Assembly (NCBI RefSeq): GCF_021869535.1
Contig: NW_026262668.1
Coordinates: forward strand, 123,442,001-123,506,000
Reading direction: 5' to 3'
From: Mytilus californianus
Taxonomy: Eukaryota
DNA: 64,000 nt
Below are positions 32,554 through 53,469 of this stretch, one piece after another (position 1 is the stretch's first letter; each line of letters opens with the position of its first letter). The notes beneath the pieces were generated by a model, which made no database searches, had not been told where the DNA came from, and saw only the letters and a program-made list of their open reading frames with translations. Position numbers and translations under genes: made by a program.

Positions 32554-32850
32554 CTGAAACAAAAATTGAATTTGTTCGCATTATGTGGACAACTATTCAA
32601 TGTTATAATTCCAGTTTACAACACATTTCCAACAATCAACATTTTATTTTTATTGGGGGAGGGGGGTAGCATTGAATTCATTTGGACTGGCATAAAAAGC
32701 TATTGTATTGAGAAGAAAATGGTTCCTGTATTATTTAAAAAAATATTAAAGTTTGTAAATTCGTAAGAAAACAATTTATGTTGGAAATATATGCCTGCAA
32801 CTTTTAGTAATTATAGTTGGTTTGGTTAACTTACACATTTACACTATCTG

Positions 32851-33590
32851 CCTACAATGATATTCCATGCAAACAATGATATCCCGTGCAGACAATGATA
32901 CCATGTGCAGACAATACTAACAGGTGCAAACAATGATATCCCGTTCAGACAATGATACCACGTACATACAATGATATCTCGTGCAGACAATGATATCCTG
33001 TGTAGCCAATGATACCACGTGCAGACAATGATATCCCATGCAGACAATGATAACAGGTGCAGAAAATGATATCCCGTGCAGACAATGATATCCCGTATAG
33101 ACAATGATATCCCATGCAGACAATGATATCCCGTGCAGACAATGCTATCCAGTGCAGACAATGATATCCCGTGCAGACAATGGTATCCCATGCAGACAAT
33201 GATATCCCGTACAGACAATGGTATCCCATGCAGACAATGATATCCCGTGCAGACAATGGTATCCCATGCAGACAATGATATCCCGTGCAGACAATGATGC
33301 CACGTGCAGACAATGATATCCCGTACAGACAATGGTATCCCATGCAGACAATGATATCCCGTGCAGACAATGGTATCCCATGCAGACAATGGTATCCCAT
33401 GCAGACAATGATATCCCGTGCAGACAATGATACCACGTGCAGACAATAATATCTCGTGCAGACAATGATACCATGTGCAGACAATGATACCACGTGCAGA
33501 CAATGATACCACGTGCCGTATTGATATTCTGAGAAAACAGTGATATACCGTGCAGACAATGATATCCTGAGAAGACAATGATATACCGTG
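32851..33590. repeat. Minisatellite, 19-bp unit (gcagacaatgatatcccgt), ~38 copies
   Basis: Period of 19 visible at 33121/33140. Explains the repetitive - strand ORFs in the track. Confidence 0.95.
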
Positions 33591-33704
33591 CCCGTGCCAC
33601 TAGGCGTAAATAAATTGTTTATGGTTGGTTGAAGTTGTATCCACAATGCAGTGTTAATTGTTATGATGTGTTATATACTTATTTTGTGTGCATCGTGTCA
33701 ATGT

Positions 33705-38304: not shown

Positions 38305-39137
38305 CAAGACAAGACAAGACAAGACAATTTTATTCTTTAAAACCATTGTATACACATTGGTACAAAGAATGAAATAATAATACATAGTATACAAAATAAA
38401 TTGTGCACATGACAAGATATGAATGTTACAATTACTATACAAGATCATTTAGTTATTATAATAGAAAAACAGATAGACAAAGGCTAACCAGGAAGACCTG
38501 CTAATGAATTTATAACCTTTATAAATTTACATATATTTTTTAACTTATTTCTATGTGTTGTTTGTAATAATTTACAAAATTTAATTACATTTACTCTGTT
38601 ACAATAACAATTATCCAAAAACAGTTTTCTTGAGTCGTCTAGGGATCTACAATTCAGAAGAAAGTGAAATTCGTCACCTAATTCTTGACATTGACATAAA
38701 TTACAATATCTCCTTTCTCTATCTAAACCTATCCATCTACCAGTTTCAATTGGTAATCTATGATTACCAGTTCTAAATCTACAAAATATAACCCTATCTC
38801 TATCTGGTAATATATCTAAATATTTTTCGAATTCAAACTTATCCTTATATAATCTGTACGATAAACCTTTTGACGAATTACATATATCTGAACGCCAGTT
38901 TTGTTGAAATTGGTCAAATAACTTCTGTTTTAAACTATTATTTAGCCATTTTGTGTTAAAGCCAGTTTGTGCTAACCAGATATTACTATAGCCACATGTT
39001 TCAAGAATATTTTTTATAAAAATAACCCATTCAGACGTACAATTATTCTGTGAATATTTAAAAAACATAAAGTTATACAAAATGTGTGACAACTTATTTT
39101 CTTTGCCGTGAACAATTCTACACCAATAATTTATCAT
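38305..39137 (-). mobile_element. 5'-truncated L2/CR1-like LINE 3' end with (TTGTC)n tail
   Basis: ORF 38484-39137 has FEFEKYL...FCRFRTGNHRLPIETGRW...CNLCQCQELGDEFHFLLNC. The - strand ends aataaaattgtcttgtcttgtcttgtct at ~38305-38335. Confidence 0.85.
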
Positions 39138-45389: not shown

Positions 45390-46215
45390 ACATCGCGATG
45401 ACCGTGAGGTCATATCGATGTATTGCTATCGCCTAAATATCCATTATGCAAATTAGTTTTGGGTTTTCAACCGATCTATAAAAATTATAGATCCGCGGTC
45501 ACTTATCTAGTGCAAAATAACATTACTTATCGCTTGTTTCAAATTCATTTTTTCAATGGATACTCCTATAAATATTTTTATTAAAACACAAATTAATAAT
45601 ATGAAAATGTGTTGTCGTTAGTTATATATATATAAAAGTAAAAAATCATTGATGATATAAATGCACACGTACCGAAAAATTGTGTTAAAGCTTACGGAAG
45701 AATATCTCAAGAACGTTTTGCGACACTCCCGGCAAGGACCGATAACTCTGTTATTGTTTTGCGGGAAAATATGAATGGCTTCTCATATCCAATCTTTTAG
45801 AAAAATCGATTTTTTTACAGAAGAGTATCCACCATGCACTTGCACTGCACTATAATTAGAATAGTAGAATAGAATGATACATAAATAGATGAAAATTATA
45901 TATACATGCAACCGTAATATTAATATAATATATAACAACAAACCAGACGTGTATACTCTGACACTATTATCATATTAGTATAATAGTCCCAGGTATACTG
46001 ATTTGTATCACTACAATATAATAGTTATTACGGTGCGGTTGAATTTCCTGTCATTTATTCATCATCCATGCACGAACTTGTATCAGAAAAATATATATCT
46101 CTGTAAATTAACCTCAGTTTCAGGTATAGAGATGTGATCTATTTCTGTGACATGTGCTTTTGACCATCCACAAGAACCTGCGGTCATCCGATGTTCAGTA
46201 CTTCAGTACTTTGAT
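45390..46215 (+). mobile_element. Diverged segment homologous (inverted) to 12139-12860 inside the Academ-like element
   Basis: Reverse complement atcaaagtactgaagtactgaacatcggatgaccgcaggttcttgtggatggtc... aligns colinearly with 12139 onward through gtgcagtgcaagtgcatgg and aacaagcgataag...ttattttgcac. Cut off at ~45390 by a family B insertion. Confidence 0.8.
46054..46059 (-). terminator. Candidate polyadenylation signal (AATAAA) for the methyltransferase-GT64 gene
   Basis: AATAAA ~158 nt after the stop codon. The aligned position in the Academ copy reads AATTGA. Confidence 0.35.
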
Positions 46216-46216
46216 A

Positions 46217-48630
46217 TTAATATAATTTTATTTGAAAATATTGAGCTGCCCATTGTACACATTCTGTCCTCCTTAAAGCCCATTTTGGGTCAACTACAGA
46301 TGCTCCATCTACTTCCGTGAGATCTTTACGCGAAGCTTGCGCAGACATCGGTACAAATAAAGGTCTCAAGTTTATTTGTTTAAAAATCAACGCATTCATT
46401 GAGATATCTTCGCAGTATCTTTTGCTATTCCAATCAACGAGCTTCTTATCTTGCATATATTTCACTAAATATTTACGGTGAAACAACATTGTTTTGCCGA
46501 TAGTTAAAGATGGATTCTTGCCCCTGGTAATGTATTCATTTATCGAATTGACATAACGCATATCTCTGCTGATGCCCACCAACCTGTTCGTATTTTCACT
46601 CCATCGTAATAACATTAACGACAGCAACGCTTCACTAATAAGAACATCGTCATCAATCACCATGACGGCATCTGTACGAATATACTGGGACACATTAAAA
46701 CGGTTGTTCATGCTGTTAACATCCGATTGAATGAAAGTAAGCTTTGGTAAATCAATATTTGGCGTAAATGATTCGTTTTTATTATTCCATATTAATACAA
46801 TTTGGTCTATTATCTGAAACTTTGAGTATGCAGGTAAGATGACGTCATAGTTGGAGAACCTTTTAGTTGAGTATCCCATAAGTACAACAGAGACGCCACT
46901 ATTTCCCACACAAAGCGTATCAGCTCCTTCTAACATAGCAGAAGTCAAATGAGGATTAATAAACATGCATGGCTCAACATAGTAACTAACTTCCTTTTTC
47001 CAGTTTTGTAAATGTTGATGCGAGATCATTATTCTGATTTTACTAAATTTCAAAATGTCTGCTGTTGCTTTCGCGCCAACATTATCGGTTTGTATGATTA
47101 TGATTGATTTTGTGTTGTCGAAATCATTGACCATCATTAGCTGACTTTGTAAAAATGTAGAATTAGCATTTGAAACAAAAAATATAACAGTTTGTTTGCC
47201 TTTACTTCGCTCAAAGCAAGCAGGATGATGTGGGATGGTGGTGGTTGCCATCATATTACGTCTACGGCCAATGAAATATACGCCTTGATTCTTCAGTCGA
47301 CGTAATTCCTCGGTGTCCCAAGAAACATACACTTCCTCAAACATAGACATGATATGTTTTGCAACCACAGTTTTTATACGAATTGGGTGCAACTGAAATT
47401 CACGATCGTTACCCGGTGGGGTTGCTACACCTCGGTAATTATCCCAAAGTCGTTCATGCCAAATAAATAATCCATTTTCTTTAATCAAATTAATGGCTGA
47501 ATTAAGTATAGATAATGCATCATAAACGTGTTCAATCACATTAATCATGACAAGAGAATCAAATTTCCTAGTATTATTAAGTTCTTCGGCCGGTATAGAT
47601 AATAAAGTAGTCGGTAAATTCTCAAAAATACCATTTTTGTAAAAGCAACGTTTAACGTGCCGCATATAATGGAATGCCATTGGTTCTACTAACGTAATAC
47701 TGGTCGCATTCTTGTCTTTAAGTATCGTCTGTGACTGTGTGAAGGGGCCTGCACCAAGCTCGATGATATCGCCTAAATTTTGTGGCAAAGATTTGTAGAA
47801 ATCAAACGATTTAGAATGAGCCTCGTTCCGATCTGTTGCAGTTTCTCGTTTATCCCATGTTACCTTTTCGACGCTTTGAGCACCATGCCATCGTTCACAA
47901 GAGACTGACAAAGTACCAGTTACGTTGCTATAGAAACACTCGTCACTCCATTGCGAACATTGTTTGCTGGCATAAACTTCACATCTGTCTCCATGCCAAG
48001 GTGGTGTACAAAATGTTTTGTCAAAGAAAGTTATACTCTTCGGCAAGTAATTTACTGGAGTGGTATTACTAGTTTGGGCTTTAACTTTATAGCTGCCAAT
48101 GCACCAACCCTTTTGAGCTCCTCTGTAAATCCAACCTTCTGGAACATGCATTTTGATATCATGTACTAAATTGTTTGTCTTTAAGTAGTCCACGCCTTTC
48201 AGCACCGCAGGCCAAGATTTAGAACAATCATCCAACAGCAATAGGTTATTGACAGAGGCAACTCTTGCCATATTTTTCATATCCGTCTCTGGAAAGTGAG
48301 CATGGTGGGCACCGTCTATATGTATCAGATCACATTTTCCCTCAAACTGAGGGACGGTTTTTGTAGAGTCACCTTTCACAAGTGCAATATGACGGTCACT
48401 GAATCTTTTCCGTAACCAGTCAATTGCAGAGTCTTCATACTCAGCTCGATCCCACATATCAAACGCTGTGTAACTGGCAGAATCTGTTGAATGCAGAAAA
48501 AGTGTTGCACTATGTCCTCCGGCAAATCCGATTTCACAAATTGTTCGTATTGGATACTTTTTACTAAATTCCTTGATAGCAGAGATATAACTTTGAAGTT
48601 GTAACTTTTCCTTTCCGTTGTATATATTCC
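46217..48630 (-). CDS. Dual SAM-methyltransferase / GT64 glycosyltransferase fusion protein, exon 2 (2414 nt, all catalytic domains)
   Basis: Acceptor attttcacag| at 48631, phase 1. MTase-1 (CEIGFAGGHS, GDSTKTVP, DLIHIDGAH, LLDD). EGF-like CTPPWHGDRC. MTase-2 (IIELGAGP, FDSLVMINVIEHVYD, LIKENGLFI). GT64 (IVLIWNN, NSMNNRF, VIDDD, CEDISMN, RRTEC). Confidence 0.9.
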
Positions 48631-48844
48631 CTGTGAAAATATAAATTATGACAATTAAATTTCTCCATATAAATTGACAAAATTGTTTTATTTTAGACTG
48701 TATAGACGTTGTAGTTCTTCGTATGATGAACAAAACGTATCACAAAAGAGATAGGCCAACTTCAGCGCCAAATATATATATAGTTCTATATAAATGGGGG
48801 AAAACATACTATGGACCAAGACTATAATCACGACAAATAGCATG

Positions 48845-48876
<32 letters not shown>

Positions 48877-49420
48877 AGTCTAAATTGAAAACAACGTTCA
48901 AACCTATAATTGCGTTGGATAAAAACCGCAATTTTTATACGTGTGCATGCAAAACAAATTTCTTGTTAGAGGGGTCTAAATACAGCACAAACAACATTTT
49001 CCAAAAGACCAAAAAAGTGAAAAAGTATATTTTAACAAAACGCATTTGACTAACAGGTCGAACAACAAATGTTCTTAAACCCTGCTGACTGCCATTGGCG
49101 ATTGCCAAATAAACGGATCACCGATGTAATAAATGGATCTTAATATAAATTTAATACTAAACAGAAAACAATAAACTTGCGGAAAAGATGATATACCGCA
49201 AACAAAAGGTGCAAAGGTTTTGTACACCATATCCGGATTTCGACAATTAATGTCTCTTCAGTGATGTTAGGAATCGAAACGGTATTTGGAAAGCCATACT
49301 TATATTTTAACAAAACGCATTTGACTAACAGGTCGAACAACAAATGTTCTTAAACCCTCCTGAGAGCCATTGGCGATTGCCAAATAATATATACATATAT
49401 ACCGAAAGCTATATTTTTAT

Positions 49421-49560
49421 GTAGCCTAGGTGGTCGAGTGGTATAGGGCGCTGAACACGGTGCAGGCGGTGTTTCCACGATGTCATAGAAGCAAGGGTTC
49501 AAATCCCGCTGAGGGAAAAACAAAAATTTGCTAACGCAAATTTGAAGATCTAACACTGTT
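49421..49560 (+). repeat. tRNA(Leu/Ser)-derived SINE-like repeat, copy 1 (others on - strand at ~49600-49740 and ~50030-50170)
   Basis: Pol III A box TGGTCGAGTGG (49431) and B box GGTTCAAATCC (49496). Spacing too long for a canonical cloverleaf. Three homologous copies share flanks. Confidence 0.7.
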
Positions 49561-51857
49561 GGGCTAAATTTGAGACGAATTATATATAATTCGTCTCAAA
49601 TTTGTTAGATCTTCAAATTTTCTAACTTTGTTCTTCCCTCAGTGGGATTCGAACCCTTGCGTCTGTGACATCGTGACAACACCGCCTGCACCGTGTCCAG
49701 CGCCCTAGACCACTCGACCACCTAGGCTTCATAACAATATAGCTTTCGGTGGTCGATGTAATGCCTTTTCTCGTCGGCTTTGTCTAGAGTTGTTACACAG
49801 TACATGATGTATAGTGGCAAGTAGATGGTGTACCTTTCAGATCAGCTATTTTTCCTATCGTATAAAGGATGATACTGTTAAATACCATGCCGCCACATCA
49901 AATTTTAATTTTAATATACACGTCTAAACATGTGACAACTTTATGACAGACATTCTCCATCGGATAACACGTGGTTATACAGGGATAACACCATATATAT
50001 ATAAATCTTCTCAAATCTACCCCCAACAATGTTAGATCTTCAAATTTGCGTTTGCAAATTTTTGTTCTTCCCTCGGCGGGATTCGCGTCTGTGACATCGT
50101 GGCAACACCGCCTGCACCGTGTCCAGCGCCCTAGACCACTCGACCACCTAGGCTACATAAAAATATAGCTTTCGGTGATCGATGTAATGCCTTTCCTCGT
50201 CGGCTTTATCTAGGTTTGTAACACAGTATTTGATGTATGGTGCTAGTAGATGGTGTACCTTTCAGATCAGCTATTTTTCCTATCGTGAGGATGATAATGT
50301 TAATTACTATGCCGCCACATCAATTTTTAATTTTAATGTTATTCTACACCTTTAAAGGGGCATTAGCTACGAGATAAAAAAAAATTAAAATATGATTTTT
50401 TTTTTCAATCATTAATGAAAGTGAAATAGTGAAATAATAATTCGCTTTTGAAGCCAGTTTGGTTTTCAATTTTGTCAAAATAAGCTAAGAAACATCGCTG
50501 ATGAATTATTCACTTGCAAGTGAATAATTCGACCTCGTTGAATACGTATTTATGTGACCATTTATTAAACCCCTTAGCTAGAGATGGGTTACGCATGAAC
50601 TAGGCGTGTTCAGCTATAAAAAGGAAAATAATGTCAACATTGAAAGTTTTTTTCCCTGTTGGTCTTAAGTCTTATTTCTATAATATTGCAAAATACCACA
50701 ATTGTGTCGGTTTGCACGTTTGCAATTTGTGTAGGTCAAAACCTTCGAACCACCACTTTTCCAGAACTCAGGTCATTGTAGCGATGACGTACTGTCAATT
50801 TATCTCTAGAAAACCGATAAATGTATCCACATGGCATCATTACCAGCCTTACATGACAGTTGTATTCTAAAGACAAATGTATCTACTAGCTATAACGCAT
50901 CATTTATTGTACTTTTAGGCCTTTTGTCAACTAAAAACTATTGTTTGATTGGTTGTCAGGGGAATTTTCATAAGTAAAAAAAAAACACTAAAAAATGTAT
51001 TTAAATATTTAGTGGAGGAGCAGACGAAAAATTTTAAAGACTAATTGCTCAAACAACACACACAAAAAAAAAATTTGTTGAAGTTATGTATAAAAAATAT
51101 CCAAAAGTAAAGTTTTTCGTCAGCGGCTTTTAATAAGAGTTATAAAGGGCGTGTTGGTGAACGGTGTGTTAGACTTTTCTTTTATTAGTACATTTCATTA
51201 ATATACCTTAATTTTAATTGAAAAATGTGTGAACGAAATTTAACCAAAAAAAATACGTCAGAAATACTTCTGAAATTTTAACATTTGTAGTAGCACGAAG
51301 CTAGGTCAATGGGAGTTTTATTTTTGTTTCTTGTTTTTTTGTCTATACGAAAATTTAACTAAATTAAATCATCTCCGTATAATGTTTATTGTAAAGCTAC
51401 ATGTTATTATATATATCAAAATGTAGCTTAAAATATTTAAAAATAATAGAATCTGAAGCAAGATGATGTATCAAATATTTTTGTTTCATACGTTTTCAAG
51501 ACAAAACTAACAACTCTAACACGGTAAAACTAAAGCTATAATGAATTTGAAACATATAGATATGTGTGCCGATAGATAGTCTAGCGGATAGGCATTAAAA
51601 GCAACTACCAATAGATCAAAGATAGTTCGTGTTGTTTTTTTTTATTTCAAAGTAAAAACTAAAAGATTTATCAGAATATATAAATATAGGTGGCACATTC
51701 CCTTCAGACGCTATCACAGTTTATCAATCCATGATGAAATAGATCAATTTCCTTAAGAAAGTTATAAAACTAATCATCATCAAGTTGTCTTAATTTCCCT
51801 TCATAAGGTTTCATAGTACACCTTTTTTGTGTACAAAGTAACCCAGGGTGCCAATAC

Positions 51858-52827
51858 ATAGAAAACTAACCACTATACGTGCTACCCGTGACAGTTAAAC
51901 CGATGCATAGAAAAACTAACATCTACACGTGCTACCTAGCTGTGACAGATAAACCATGCATAGAAAAACAAACCACTACACGTGCTACCTGTGACAGTTA
52001 AACCAATGCATAGAAAAACTAACATCTACACGTGCTACCTAGCTGTGACAGATACACCATGCATAGAAAAACAAACCACTGCACGTGCTACCTGTGACAG
52101 TCAAACCAATGCATAGAAAAACTAACCACTACACGTGCTACCTGTGGCAGTTAAACCAATGCATAGAAAAACTAACCACTTCACGTGCTACCTGTTACAG
52201 ATAAACCAATGCATAGAAAAACTAACCACTACACGTGCTACCTGTAACAGTTAAACCAATGCATAGAAAAACTAACCACTACACGTGCTACCTGTTACAG
52301 ATAAACCAATGCATAGAAAAACTAACCACCACACGTGCTACCTGTGACAGTTAAACCAATGCATAGAAAAACAAACCACTACACGTGCTACATGTGACAG
52401 TTAAACCAATGCATAGAAAAACAAACCACTACACGTGCTACCTGTGACAGTCAAACCAATGCATAGAAAAACTAACCACTACACGTGCTACCTGTGGCAG
52501 TTAAACCAATGCATAGAAAAACTAACCACTTCACGTGCTACCTGTTACAGATAAACCAATGCATAGAAAAACTAACCACTACACGTGCTACCTGTAACAG
52601 TTAAACCAATGCATAGAAAAACTAACCACTACACGTGCTACCTGTTACAGATAAACCAATGCATAGAAAAACTAACCACCACACGTGCTACCTGTGACAG
52701 TTAAACCAATGCATAGAAAAACAAACCACTACACGTGCTACATGTGACAGTTAAACCAATGCATAGAAAAACAAACCACTACACGTGCTACATGTGACAG
52801 TTAAACCAATGCACAGAAAAACAAACC
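51858..52827. repeat. Minisatellite, 50-bp unit, ~19 copies, with a 7-unit (350-bp) higher-order duplication
   Basis: accaatgcatagaaaaactaaccactacacgtgctacctgtgacagttaa. Period 50 at 52203/52253. Confidence 0.95.
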
Positions 52828-53186
52828 AAAAGCTTGATATAACTCTTAATTTCAGGATTGTAACATAAAAATATAATTATAAGAATTGACTGAGTCTTTT
52901 TATAATTTTGTAGGATGGGGATGTAAAAGCGGTGATCGTGCGCACATTTTTTAATATGAAATTAAGCGCATCTGCGCTTCGCACAACCTATGCTTCGGTT
53001 AACGCTTTTACACCCGAATTAAAGTAATTTTTATGGTACAACTATGAAATTAAATATAGCATAGTAGTTTCAGTTCTCAATATTTTGAAAGTTTTTGATA
53101 AGCTTTGTGTTCCGCTTACATATGTTTGTCTACTTTGTAAACCTAGACATATTTTTACATTTAGTATAGTACATAGTAAAACTTAC

Positions 53187-53469
53187 CGTAAATTTTACTC
53201 TCCGGTGACTTTTTACGTATTGTCACATCTAGTTCGTCCAACAGGCTATACAAACTGTCCTGATTTTCACCGTTAAATGTTACTTTAGTTTCTATTGTCA
53301 CCGATTTGTTCACAGAGAAAACCTGCACTGATTGTTGTATTCTCTCACTAACTAGATTTTTTACAAATTCCATATGATCAAACCCGGCGAATAAAAACAA
53401 AAGAACTAGACAACACACAACGAACAACAAAACCAGACATTTCTGAAATCTTTGGAACATTTGACTCAT
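53187..53469 (-). CDS. Dual SAM-methyltransferase / GT64 fusion protein, exon 1 (type II signal anchor plus stem)
   Basis: ATG at 53469 (cacaaccATGA). MSQMFQRFQK-CLVLLFVVCCLVLLFLFAGF = short basic tail plus hydrophobic anchor. Donor G|gtaagt at 53187/53186 is phase 1 and matches exon 2. Joined CDS 2697 nt = 898 aa. Confidence 0.82.

What the first reader, a model, noticed from the sequence alone, without database searches (positions are those of the whole stretch)
46217..53469. Golgi-type dual methyltransferase + GT64 fusion: candidate enzyme that builds and O-methylates bivalve glycans
Seen: splicing exon 53469-53187 to exon 48630-46217 (both phase 1, consensus GT-AG) gives an 898-aa protein with a short basic N-tail, a hydrophobic anchor, a stem, a Methyltransf_24-like domain, an EGF-like Cys motif, a second, different class I SAM MTase and a complete GT64 domain with intact DDD and CEDI motifs. 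Established: animal GT64 domains (EXT1/2, EXTL1-3) are retaining alpha-HexNAc transferases found alone or fused to GT47; I know of no case fused to methyltransferases. O-methylated sugars are a recognised feature of mollusc glycans. From memory (to be verified), bivalve glycolipids and N-glycans carry a fucose branched with 4-O-methyl-GlcA and 3-O-methyl-alpha-HexNAc, and the mollusc sugar O-methyltransferases are not identified. Inference: one alpha-HexNAc transferase plus two distinct MTases on a luminal type II protein fits that two-methyl epitope, or a methylated heparan-like glycan, and may be an undescribed single-polypeptide pathway.
Basis: partly seen in the sequence, partly recalled or inferred. 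Interest (0 to 1): 0.85.

Follow-up and report, generated by a model that had tools for sequence, protein, structure and literature searches.

The report
Mussel sugar-adding, double-methylating fusion enzyme
This mussel gene really does encode one membrane-anchored protein that joins a sugar-attaching enzyme to two different methyl-adding enzymes; its nearest relatives are in green algae and giant viruses rather than in other animals, so it is a good untested candidate for the unknown enzymes that methylate mollusc sugar chains.

Summary
Exons 53469-53187 and 48630-46217 (minus strand) join at GT-AG sites into an 898-aa ORF. An RNA-seq contig crosses exactly this junction, and an annotated Mytilus galloprovincialis protein (897 aa, 89% identical) has the same two exons. 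Pfam and AlphaFold2 (pLDDT 92) give a type II anchor, a COMT/MycF-like Methyltransf_24 domain, a reduced EGF-like motif, a second class I methyltransferase, an unassigned alpha/beta subdomain and a GT64 domain (EXTL2 Z 27.9). Signature residues are conserved in all three enzymes, and dN/dS is 0.13.

The fusion is not unique. Among named sequences it occurs only in Mytilus, as several partly intronless paralogs. The same three modules also recur, in at least four orders and with other glycosyltransferases, in Tetraselmis green algae and in giant-virus-like contigs. That recurrence supports functional coupling on one glycan and suggests horizontal acquisition.

Donor, substrate and methylation position are untested, and the proposed 4-O-Me-GlcA/3-O-Me-HexNAc epitope is one possibility. 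Another piece of this genome was read the same way earlier in the scan. No paper found describes the family. I rate it a new variant of a known kind (GT-methyltransferase fusions such as PBCV-1 A064R), interest 0.65.

The parts
53187..53469 (-). Exon 1: start codon, 10-aa basic tail, signal-anchor and first part of the stem (aa 1-94 plus 1 nt)
   Evidence: The ORF and the GTAAGT donor are. It matches the N-terminus of M. galloprovincialis P0001. An RNA contig covers 53186-53285.
53380..53439 (-). Hydrophobic signal-anchor, aa 11-30 (CLVLLFVVCCLVLLFLFAGF)
   Evidence: The Kyte-Doolittle 19-residue maximum of 3.2 falls only here. R7 and K10 lie on the N side, D31 and E34 on the C side.
48631..53186 (-). 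Single phase-1 intron (4556 nt), full of high-copy repeats
   Evidence: GT..AG ends. DNA and RNA contig depth is very high at about 48750-49500, 50250-50800 and 51370-51930. The same intron position is found in the M. galloprovincialis copy, but not in two paralogs.
46217..48630 (-). Exon 2: all catalytic domains plus the stop codon (46217-46219)
   Evidence: Open frame of 804 codons. AlphaFold2 mean pLDDT 92.1. dN/dS 0.13 against the M. galloprovincialis copy.
48080..48628 (-). Methyltransf_24 module, aa 96-278: cation-dependent O-methyltransferase fold
   Evidence: Pfam PF13578, E 8.6e-16. VIA-align scores: COMT Z 18.6, MycF sugar 3'-O-MT Z 18.2, MeT1 17.2, SpnH 16.8. Invariant residues are E127, G129, G133, D152, D195, D200, D228 and D229.
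47879..48028 (-). Reduced EGF-like Cys motif, about aa 296-345 (C302-C339)
   Evidence: Short beta-hairpins in the model. Homologs carry EGF Pfam families PF23106 and PF25024, and the consensus is C-x-C-x-P-G-x-x-G-x-x-C.
47234..47878 (-). Second class I SAM methyltransferase, about aa 346-560 (Methyltransf_11/12/23 type)
   Evidence: Pfam. Domain model pLDDT 95.6. The fold is a generic class I methyltransferase: best Z 14.7, NodS TM 0.70, RebM Z 13.5. E385, G389, D452 and H509 are conserved in at least 93% of 91 homologs.
46949..47194 (-). Unassigned beta-alpha-beta subdomain, aa 574-655, between MT2 and GT64
   Evidence: Confidently modelled. No Pfam match, and the structure hit lists do not cover it. 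The giant-virus-like proteins P0013-15 and P0018 have it; Tetraselmis-type P0012 does not.
46220..46918 (-). GT64 glycosyltransferase domain, aa 666-898
   Evidence: Pfam PF09258, E 1.6e-27. Human EXT2 E 5e-14 with DDD and CEDI aligned. Mouse EXTL2 1on8_B Z 27.9, rmsd 1.7 A over 221 residues. R738, D754, D755, D836 and R882 are invariant, and D756 is kept in at least 93%.

Best explanation
This is a real, spliced mussel gene under purifying selection. It encodes a type II, Golgi-type membrane protein whose luminal part carries three intact catalytic modules. They are a metal-dependent O-methyltransferase (Methyltransf_24), a second class I SAM methyltransferase preceded by an EGF-like motif, and a retaining GT-A glycosyltransferase of family GT64. 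The most likely mechanism is that GT64 adds one alpha-linked sugar to a growing glycan, and the two methyltransferases then methylate hydroxyls of that sugar and/or its neighbour, using SAM imported into the Golgi. By analogy with every characterised GT64 enzyme, the acceptor is probably a glucuronic acid. One polypeptide would thus build and cap a methylated glycan terminus. The gene belongs to a small paralog family in mytilid mussels. That family shares ancestry with multi-domain glyco-enzymes of green algae (Tetraselmis), other marine protists and giant viruses, and most likely entered the mussel lineage by horizontal transfer. Shown here: the gene model, the domains, the folds, motif conservation, the distribution and the module permutations. 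Inferred: Golgi location, glycan substrate, sugar O-methylation, the donor sugar and the direction of transfer.
For: The gene is real. It has consensus splice sites, an RNA contig across the junction, an orthologous two-exon gene in M. galloprovincialis and dN/dS of 0.13 and 0.08. It lies in AT-rich, repeat-rich animal DNA with 7% ORF density, against 79-94% in the viral contigs.

The domains look active. Evidence is Pfam, AlphaFold2 pLDDT 92 and 95.6, EXTL2 Z 27.9, COMT/MycF Z about 18, and signature residues that are invariant or kept in at least 93% across mussel, algal and viral homologs.

The three modules are functionally coupled. They occur as MT24-MT2-GT64, GT64-MT2-MT24, MT2-MT24-GT64 and GT64-MT24-MT2, and in two-module forms. 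They are often joined to further glycosyltransferase domains (GT34/DUF273, B4GalT, GT10, PF03407, LicD). In one viral ortholog pair the C-terminal MT24 is replaced by an FkbM-type methyltransferase next to the same GT64.

There is experimental precedent for a GT+GT+sugar-O-methyltransferase polypeptide: PBCV-1 A064R (PMC9614988).

The origin looks foreign. Named homologs occur only in Mytilus, Tetraselmis and Prymnesium. The paralog P0003 is fully intronless, and a third paralog lacks this intron. In the careful trees the mussel clade groups with the giant-virus-like clade for MT2 (100/99) and for GT64 (99/90). Animal EXT GT64 domains are only 22-25% identical in the structure alignments, and Spirometra EXT matches at 29%.

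The glycan context fits. Mytilus glycans are 4-O-methylated, with GlcA on branched fucose (PMC8699351, PMC6994554).
Against: There is no biochemical evidence at all. The MT2 fold is generic, and NodS and phosphoethanolamine N-methyltransferases score as well as sugar O-methyltransferases. MT24 resembles catechol O-methyltransferases as much as sugar O-methyltransferases. Expression evidence is thin: one spliced contig, and about 1x raw-read depth on exon 2 and none on exon 1 in run X21. Golgi location rests only on hydropathy. The HGT direction is not proven: the trees are unrooted, most neighbours are unnamed metagenomic proteins, and AU tests reject neither a Tetraselmis nor a virus sister group for GT64. 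The MT24 tree is unresolved. No capsid or polymerase hallmark gene was seen in the roughly 30 kb of viral contig that I read. Because algae and viruses share the module set, the product need not be the mollusc-specific epitope.
Confidence: 0.62

Rival explanations
1. One reading: the enzyme makes the bivalve branched-fucose epitope. GT64 would add the alpha-HexNAc, one methyltransferase would make 3-O-Me-HexNAc and the other 4-O-Me-GlcA.
For: One alpha-transferase plus two different methyltransferases matches a two-methyl epitope. Mytilus edulis N-glycans have 4-O-methylated antennae with branched fucose and GlcA on fucose. EXTL2, the best structural match, transfers alpha-GalNAc or alpha-GlcNAc next to GlcA.
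Against: The same module trio exists in Tetraselmis and in giant viruses, which are not known to make this epitope. The exact glycolipid structure rests on memory; only the reference to Hori et al. 1981 was found, not the structure. Named homologs were found only in Mytilus, whereas the glycolipid epitope was described in a freshwater unionid. No substrate information can be read from the folds.
Confidence: 0.2
2. The methyltransferase domains act on non-sugar groups in the secretory pathway. Candidates are N-methylation of aminoethylphosphonate or phosphoethanolamine substituents on glycans, or O-methylation of catechols such as DOPA in secreted mussel proteins. GT64 would then be only a neighbouring activity.
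For: MT2's best structural matches include phosphoethanolamine N-methyltransferases and NodS. MT24's best matches are catechol O-methyltransferases.
Against: These similarities are at the generic fold level (Z 13-18, 8-19% identity). The recurrent fusion to GT64 and other glycosyltransferases in algae and viruses, and the swap of MT24 for an FkbM-type domain beside the same GT64, point to a glycan substrate.
Confidence: 0.1
3. The gene is an ancient eukaryotic gene inherited vertically and lost in almost all other animals, not a horizontal acquisition.
For: The trees have no reliable root, and most relatives are unnamed. Two Logan contigs (P0005, 62% identical; P0007, 83% identical to M. coruscus P0017) show the family in further, unidentified taxa.
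Against: The search of 5.8 billion proteins returned no named animal other than Mytilus. Spirometra EXT matches only weakly in GT64. Paralogs are intronless. The closest relatives are viral or algal at 44-54% identity per module.
Confidence: 0.2
4. The locus is an artefact: algal or viral contamination of the assembly, or a dead insertion.
For: The relatives are foreign, and nearly all of the coding sequence lies in one exon.
Against: A spliceosomal intron full of mussel high-copy repeats interrupts the gene. The gene lies within 64 kb of 33% GC, low-ORF-density DNA. Annotated proteins of this family come from the M. galloprovincialis, M. coruscus and M. edulis assemblies. The reading frame is intact, dN/dS is 0.13, and a spliced RNA exists.
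Confidence: 0.02

Closest known systems
PBCV-1 (chlorovirus) A064R, a three-domain glycan-building enzyme
   Same: One polypeptide carries glycosyltransferase domains plus a SAM-dependent sugar O-methyltransferase, and together they build and methylate the terminus of a glycan. This was shown experimentally (PMC9614988). It is also of giant-virus origin.
   Different: A064R has two rhamnosyltransferase domains (one with a GT34-like fold) and one methyltransferase, and is soluble. The mussel protein has one GT64 domain, two unrelated methyltransferases, an EGF-like motif and a membrane anchor. I did not test for sequence homology. The likeness is in how it works, not in family membership.
Animal GT64 enzymes: EXTL2, and the GT64 domains of EXT1/EXT2/EXTL3
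   Same: The Pfam family, the GT-A fold (EXTL2 Z 27.9, rmsd 1.7 A), the DXD motif and the CEDI aspartate are shared. They are also type II Golgi proteins.
   Different: Sequence identity is only 22-25% in the structure alignments. There is no GT47 domain and no role in heparan sulfate is implied. It is fused to methyltransferases and appears closer to algal and viral GT64 domains in identity (30-38% against 29% for the one EXT sequence, Spirometra) and in the EXT-rooted quick tree. The automatic names 'EXT2' and 'EXTL3' in M. coruscus and M. edulis are misleading.
Plant GT64 enzymes GMT1 and GINT1 (GIPC glycosylation)
   Same: They are stand-alone GT64 Golgi enzymes that add one sugar onto GlcA. 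They show that GT64 donors are not limited to HexNAc, since GMT1 transfers mannose (PMC7980081).
   Different: They have no methyltransferase domains. I did not test their sequence relationship to the mussel protein.
Tetraselmis striata / Tetraselmis sp. GSL018 MT24-MT24-EGF-MT2-GT64 and EGF-MT2-GT64 proteins (P0012 cluster, P0056, P0059), and giant-virus-like proteins (P0013-15, P0018, P0023, L006, L007)
   Same: They are homologous in all three modules (44-54% identity for MT24 and MT2, 30-38% for GT64) and keep the same invariant residues. Tetraselmis has the same module order. The viral proteins share the extra alpha/beta subdomain.
   Different: They differ in module order, in a duplicated MT24 (Tetraselmis) and in additional N-terminal glycosyltransferase domains (viral). 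All are uncharacterised, and no paper on them was found.
Bacterial sugar O-methyltransferases MycF, SpnH and MeT1, and catechol O-methyltransferase
   Same: The MT24 module has the same metal-dependent class I fold (Z 16.8-18.6). By sequence it also has an acidic triad at the positions of the COMT metal ligands.
   Different: Identity is 11-19%, so the substrate cannot be inferred.

Membership tests
CAZy GT64 / Pfam Glyco_transf_64 | Profile match above the curated cut-off | tested here: met
   PF09258 scores 96.9 bits against a cut-off of 21.3, E 1.6e-27, covering 3-229 of 245 profile positions.
CAZy GT64 / Pfam Glyco_transf_64 | GT-A fold superposable on a solved GT64 enzyme | tested here: met
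   EXTL2 1on8_B Z 27.9, rmsd 1.7 A over 221 residues; EXT2 and EXTL3 Z 24-25.
CAZy GT64 / Pfam Glyco_transf_64 | DXD metal/UDP motif and the conserved C-terminal Asp (CEDI) and Arg | tested here: met
   D754-D755-D756 and C834-E835-D836-I837 align with EXT2 IDDD and CEDI. R738, D754, D755, D836 and R882 are invariant in 47 homologs.
CAZy GT64 / Pfam Glyco_transf_64 | Retaining alpha-glycosyl transfer from a nucleotide sugar | not testable with these tools
   This needs an enzyme assay.
Exostosins (EXT1/EXT2/EXTL3) | N-terminal GT47 (Exostosin) domain fused to GT64 | tested here: not met
   Pfam finds no PF03016, and the N-terminal 560 residues are methyltransferases. The protein is not an exostosin, despite the automatic names in M. 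coruscus and M. edulis.
Cation-dependent class I O-methyltransferases (Methyltransf_24 / COMT-CCoAOMT-MycF type) | Profile match and Rossmann-type fold | tested here: met
   PF13578 scores 59.2 bits against a cut-off of 26.3. COMT Z 18.6, MycF 18.2.
Cation-dependent class I O-methyltransferases (Methyltransf_24 / COMT-CCoAOMT-MycF type) | SAM motif I and an acidic metal-binding triad | tested here: inconclusive
   E127-x-G129-x-x-G-G133, D152, D200 (IDGAHH) and D228-D229 (LDDC) are invariant in 38 homologs. Their equivalence to COMT D141/D169/N170 is inferred from sequence pattern; I did not check it by superposing coordinates.
Class I SAM methyltransferases, Methyltransf_11/12/23 type | Profile match and fold | tested here: met
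   PF08241 scores 24.0 bits against a cut-off of 21.2; PF13489 scores 26.5 against 27, just below. The domain model (pLDDT 95.6) matches many class I methyltransferases at Z 12-14.7. E385-L-G-A-G389 is motif I.
Glycan (sugar) O-methyltransferase | Methyl transfer to a sugar hydroxyl | not testable with these tools
   The support is only contextual: recurrent fusion with glycosyltransferases.
Type II Golgi-resident glycan-modifying enzyme | Short cytosolic N-tail, one signal-anchor, luminal stem and catalytic domains | tested here: met
   Hydropathy, charge distribution and sequon positions all fit. Localisation itself cannot be tested here.
Horizontally acquired gene in an animal | Integrated in host DNA and expressed | tested here: met
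   The gene has an intron carrying mussel repeats, a spliced RNA contig and orthologs in other Mytilus assemblies.
Horizontally acquired gene in an animal | Absent from other animals and nested within a non-animal clade on a rooted tree | tested here: inconclusive
   The only named animal hits are Mytilus. The mussel clade groups with giant-virus-like sequences (100/99 for MT2, 99/90 for GT64). However, the trees are unrooted, the neighbours are mostly unnamed, and the AU tests are not decisive.

The most novel reading that the evidence does not exclude
This gene family would be the first identified set of animal glycan O-methyltransferases. A giant virus or alga would have delivered a ready-made 'add one sugar and methylate twice' cassette to the mytilid lineage. 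The cassette then gained an intron, duplicated, and now makes the methylated (4-O-Me, GlcA/branched-fucose) glycan termini that are characteristic of Mytilus secreted glycoproteins.
Probability: 0.25. Interest if true: 0.85.

Novelty: new variant of a known kind. Interest (0 to 1): 0.65.

Why it matters
O-methylated sugars are a hallmark of mollusc, nematode and algal glycans. They are targets of innate-immune lectins, yet the papers I read say the responsible animal enzymes are still unidentified (PMC7614267). This gene offers a concrete, clonable candidate with three separable activities. Its algal and viral homologs give independent systems in which to test the same chemistry. If the foreign origin holds, it would be an example of an animal acquiring a multi-step glycan-decoration cassette from the plankton it filters or from their viruses. 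It also corrects misleading automatic names ('EXT2', 'EXTL3') in mussel genome annotations.

Tried and rejected
- PDB sequence searches with the two methyltransferase modules gave nothing useful.
- NCBIfam gave only a weak UbiG hit.
- The ESM Atlas feature and shape searches gave only generic methyltransferase/GT2 clusters.
- A scan of 185,579 bacterial and archaeal genomes with the MT24 motifs found no relative.
- The mimivirus early-promoter motif AAAATTGA is not enriched in the viral contigs, so they are not shown to be Imitervirales.
- Walking about 30 kb of the 179-kb IMG/VR contig found eukaryote-like genes (kinase, SNF2-RING, Ras, SET, DHHC-like) but no capsid or polymerase hallmark.
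- The MT24 tree is unresolved and disturbed by long branches.
- The quick GT64 tree put mussels next to the Tetraselmis group (support 86), but the careful tree did not. AU tests reject neither placement.
- The first AU test was unfair, because it left unlabeled members of the viral clade out of the constrained group. I disregard it.
- Raw RNA reads of run X21 barely cover the gene, so start, end and expression level could not be read.
- The organisms behind Logan contigs L004 and L005 (P0005, P0007) could not be identified.
- Literature searches for a described GT64-methyltransferase fusion, or for HGT of glycosyltransferases into Mytilus, found nothing relevant.
- The exact Hyriopsis glycolipid structure could not be confirmed from the papers held.

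Full report
**1. The observation.** On the minus strand, 53469-53187 (283 nt) and 48630-46217 (2414 nt) join in phase 1 into 899 codons with one terminal stop, giving 898 aa. The donor is ACG|GTAAGT and the acceptor TTTCACAG|G. The window has no N runs and no second copy of the gene. The model has independent support. In RNA-seq run X2, a 764-nt contig lies on 53285-53186 and continues without a gap on 48629-48066. This is the proposed junction, with the shared G assigned to the other side. The annotated M. galloprovincialis protein P0001 (897 aa) aligns from residue 1 to 898 at 89% identity, and its gene has the same two exons with an intron of about 3.2 kb at the same codon. Raw RNA reads of another run (X21) cover exon 2 at only about 1x, so expression in that sample is low. 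The intron carries several very high-copy repeats.

**2. Anatomy.** The only strongly hydrophobic stretch is aa 11-30 (Kyte-Doolittle 3.2). R7 and K10 lie before it and acidic residues after it, and all eight N-x-S/T sequons lie on the C-terminal side, as expected for a type II signal-anchor. Pfam finds three domains:
- Methyltransf_24, full-protein aa 127-230.
- A second class I methyltransferase, aa 382-487. Methyltransf_11 is above its cut-off; Methyltransf_23 is 0.5 bit below.
- Glyco_transf_64, aa 676-894.

AlphaFold2 models the exon-2 product with mean pLDDT 92.1 and the middle part alone with 95.6. The GT64 domain superposes on mouse EXTL2 (Z 27.9, rmsd 1.7 A over 221 residues) and on EXT2 and EXTL3 (Z 24-25). 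DDD and CEDI align with EXT2. The first methyltransferase has the metal-dependent O-methyltransferase fold. COMT scores Z 18.6, and the sugar O-methyltransferases MycF (18.2), MeT1 (17.2) and SpnH (16.8) score in the same range. The second is a generic class I methyltransferase (best Z 14.7). NodS, RebM and phosphoethanolamine N-methyltransferases rank among many equals, so the fold says nothing about its substrate. Between MT2 and GT64 lies a confidently modelled beta-alpha-beta subdomain (aa 574-655) that I could not assign. The EGF-like motif is reduced in the mussel protein but complete in homologs. Signature residues are invariant or nearly so across mussel, algal and viral homologs:
- MT24: E127, G129, G133, D152, D200, D228, D229.
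- MT2: E385, G389, D452, H509.
- GT64: R738, D754-D756, D836, R882.

dN/dS is 0.13 against the M. galloprovincialis copy and 0.08 against a M. coruscus paralog. All three modules therefore look catalytically competent and under selection.

**3. Relatives.** In a search of 5.8 billion proteins, the named full-length relatives are all from Mytilus (M. galloprovincialis, M. coruscus, M. edulis). They are labelled 'hypothetical', 'GT64 domain-containing', or automatically 'EXT2' and 'EXTL3'. At least three paralog groups exist, partly in tandem. M. coruscus P0003 is fully intronless, and a third paralog just upstream of the M. galloprovincialis ortholog lacks this intron.

Outside mussels, the same three modules occur at 44-54% identity (MT24, MT2) and 30-38% (GT64) in unnamed marine sequences, in at least four orders plus two-module forms. 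Some of these could be attributed:
- The P0012 cluster (MT24-MT24-EGF-MT2-GT64) contains Tetraselmis striata proteins.
- P0056 and P0059 (EGF-MT2-GT64) are from Tetraselmis striata and Tetraselmis sp. GSL018.
- A related GT64 cluster includes Mucochytrium quahogii.
- The EGF-MT2 module alone occurs in Prymnesium parvum.

Other relatives sit on compact, intron-free contigs with 79-94% ORF density. These contigs carry Ras/Arf, SET, Snf7, FYVE-PI3K, HNH, protein kinase, SNF2-RING and TylF genes. Two of them are IMG/VR viral contigs of 106 and 179 kb. I call these giant-virus-like, because no capsid or polymerase gene lay in the parts I could read. There the modules are joined to further glycosyltransferase domains (DUF273/GT34, B4GalT, GT10, PF03407, LicD). 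In one ortholog pair the C-terminal MT24 is replaced by an FkbM-type methyltransferase beside the same GT64. No bacterial or archaeal relative of the MT24 motifs was found.

**4. Phylogeny.** Careful IQ-TREE runs gave these groupings:

| Module | Groups with the mussel clade | Outside | Support |
|---|---|---|---|
| MT2 | giant-virus-like clade and three unnamed proteins | Tetraselmis group | 100/99 |
| GT64 | clade of giant-virus-like and unnamed stand-alone GT64 proteins | Tetraselmis group | 99/90 |

AU tests do not reject a mussel-Tetraselmis grouping (p 0.098) or a mussel-virus-only grouping (p 0.18). The quick GT64 tree had favoured Tetraselmis weakly, and the MT24 tree is unresolved. 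The extra alpha/beta subdomain is shared with the viral proteins but is missing in Tetraselmis P0012, whereas the module order is shared with Tetraselmis. The donor therefore cannot be named. The gene pool is 'marine algae and their giant viruses'.

**5. How it most likely works.** The recurrence of the same three modules in many orders, always alongside glycosyltransferases, is classical Rosetta-stone evidence that they act on one substrate. PBCV-1 A064R shows experimentally that a polypeptide of this kind (GT + GT + sugar O-methyltransferase) builds and methylates a glycan terminus (PMC9614988). I therefore read the mussel protein as a luminal enzyme that adds one alpha-linked sugar and methylates two positions on or near it. 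The characterised GT64 enzymes I know of (EXT1/2, EXTL2/3, and plant GMT1/GINT1; the last two from PMC7980081) glycosylate a glucuronic acid, and Mytilus N-glycans carry GlcA on antennal fucose and are 4-O-methylated (PMC6994554, PMC8699351). A GlcA-containing acceptor is thus a reasonable guess. These steps are inference; nothing here measures activity.

**6. Comparison with the known, and novelty.** The protein meets every sequence and fold criterion of GT64 and of class I methyltransferases. It fails the exostosin criterion because it has no GT47 domain, so the 'EXT2/EXTL3' labels are wrong. I found no paper describing a GT64-methyltransferase fusion, its algal or viral homologs, or HGT of such a gene into mussels. 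An earlier follow-up in this scan, on tandem paralogs elsewhere in this genome, reached the same reading. I saw that note only after my own searches had pointed the same way. It is not independent evidence, but the scan has found this family before on other DNA. I class the finding as a new variant of a known kind, namely multi-domain glycosyltransferase-methyltransferase enzymes.

**7. Verdict.**

| Claim | Probability |
|---|---|
| Real gene with intact domains | about 0.95 |
| Glycan-building and glycan-methylating Golgi enzyme | about 0.6-0.65 |
| Foreign (algal or giant-virus) origin | about 0.6 |
| The specific branched-fucose epitope | about 0.2 |

Interest is 0.65. The finding makes the long-open identity of animal glycan O-methyltransferases directly testable, but every functional statement is still inference.

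Noticed in passing
window 48750-49500, 50250-50800, 51370-51930 (inside the intron): Stretches with extremely high contig depth in DNA and RNA runs, with many internal joints and loose ends. They are probably high-copy transposable elements or MITE-like repeats in the intron.
   Followed up: partly
window 46054-46059 (minus strand, 158 nt after the stop): The first AATAAA downstream of the stop codon lies inside the stretch that another first-stage note (s1-320716) calls Academ-homologous. I did not test the transposon homology or polyA use.
   Followed up: no
L012 3448-6037 (M. galloprovincialis UYJE01002911.1): A tandem paralog (54% identical, without the aa 94/95 intron, one apparent frameshift near aa 510) sits about 4 kb upstream of the ortholog. 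This window has no such copy in the 10.5 kb upstream, so there may be presence/absence variation or a species difference.
   Followed up: partly
L006 9989-12997 (IMGVR_UViG_3300021957_008066) versus P0023 / L001: These are orthologous viral proteins, 77% identical over residues 1-762, with different C-terminal methyltransferase modules (FkbM-type Methyltransf_21 versus Methyltransf_24) next to the same GT64. This is a natural domain swap. The N-terminus also carries LicD and DUF273/GT34-like domains.
   Followed up: partly
P0165 cluster: A related GT64 protein cluster includes Mucochytrium quahogii (the QPX parasite of hard clams). It is another marine protist living in close contact with bivalves that carries this GT64 type.
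   Followed up: no
window 32844-33646 and 38484-39137 (minus strand): These are the only other ORFs above 150 aa in the window, including two overlapping frames at 32.8-33.6 kb. They have no Pfam match and their nature is unknown.
   Followed up: partly
window exon 2 versus L012 13524-15935: dS of 0.35 between this gene and the M. galloprovincialis copy. This may be high for orthologs within the Mytilus edulis species complex (my impression, not checked). The window may come from a more distant Mytilus species, or the two copies may be divergent alleles or paralogs.
   Followed up: no
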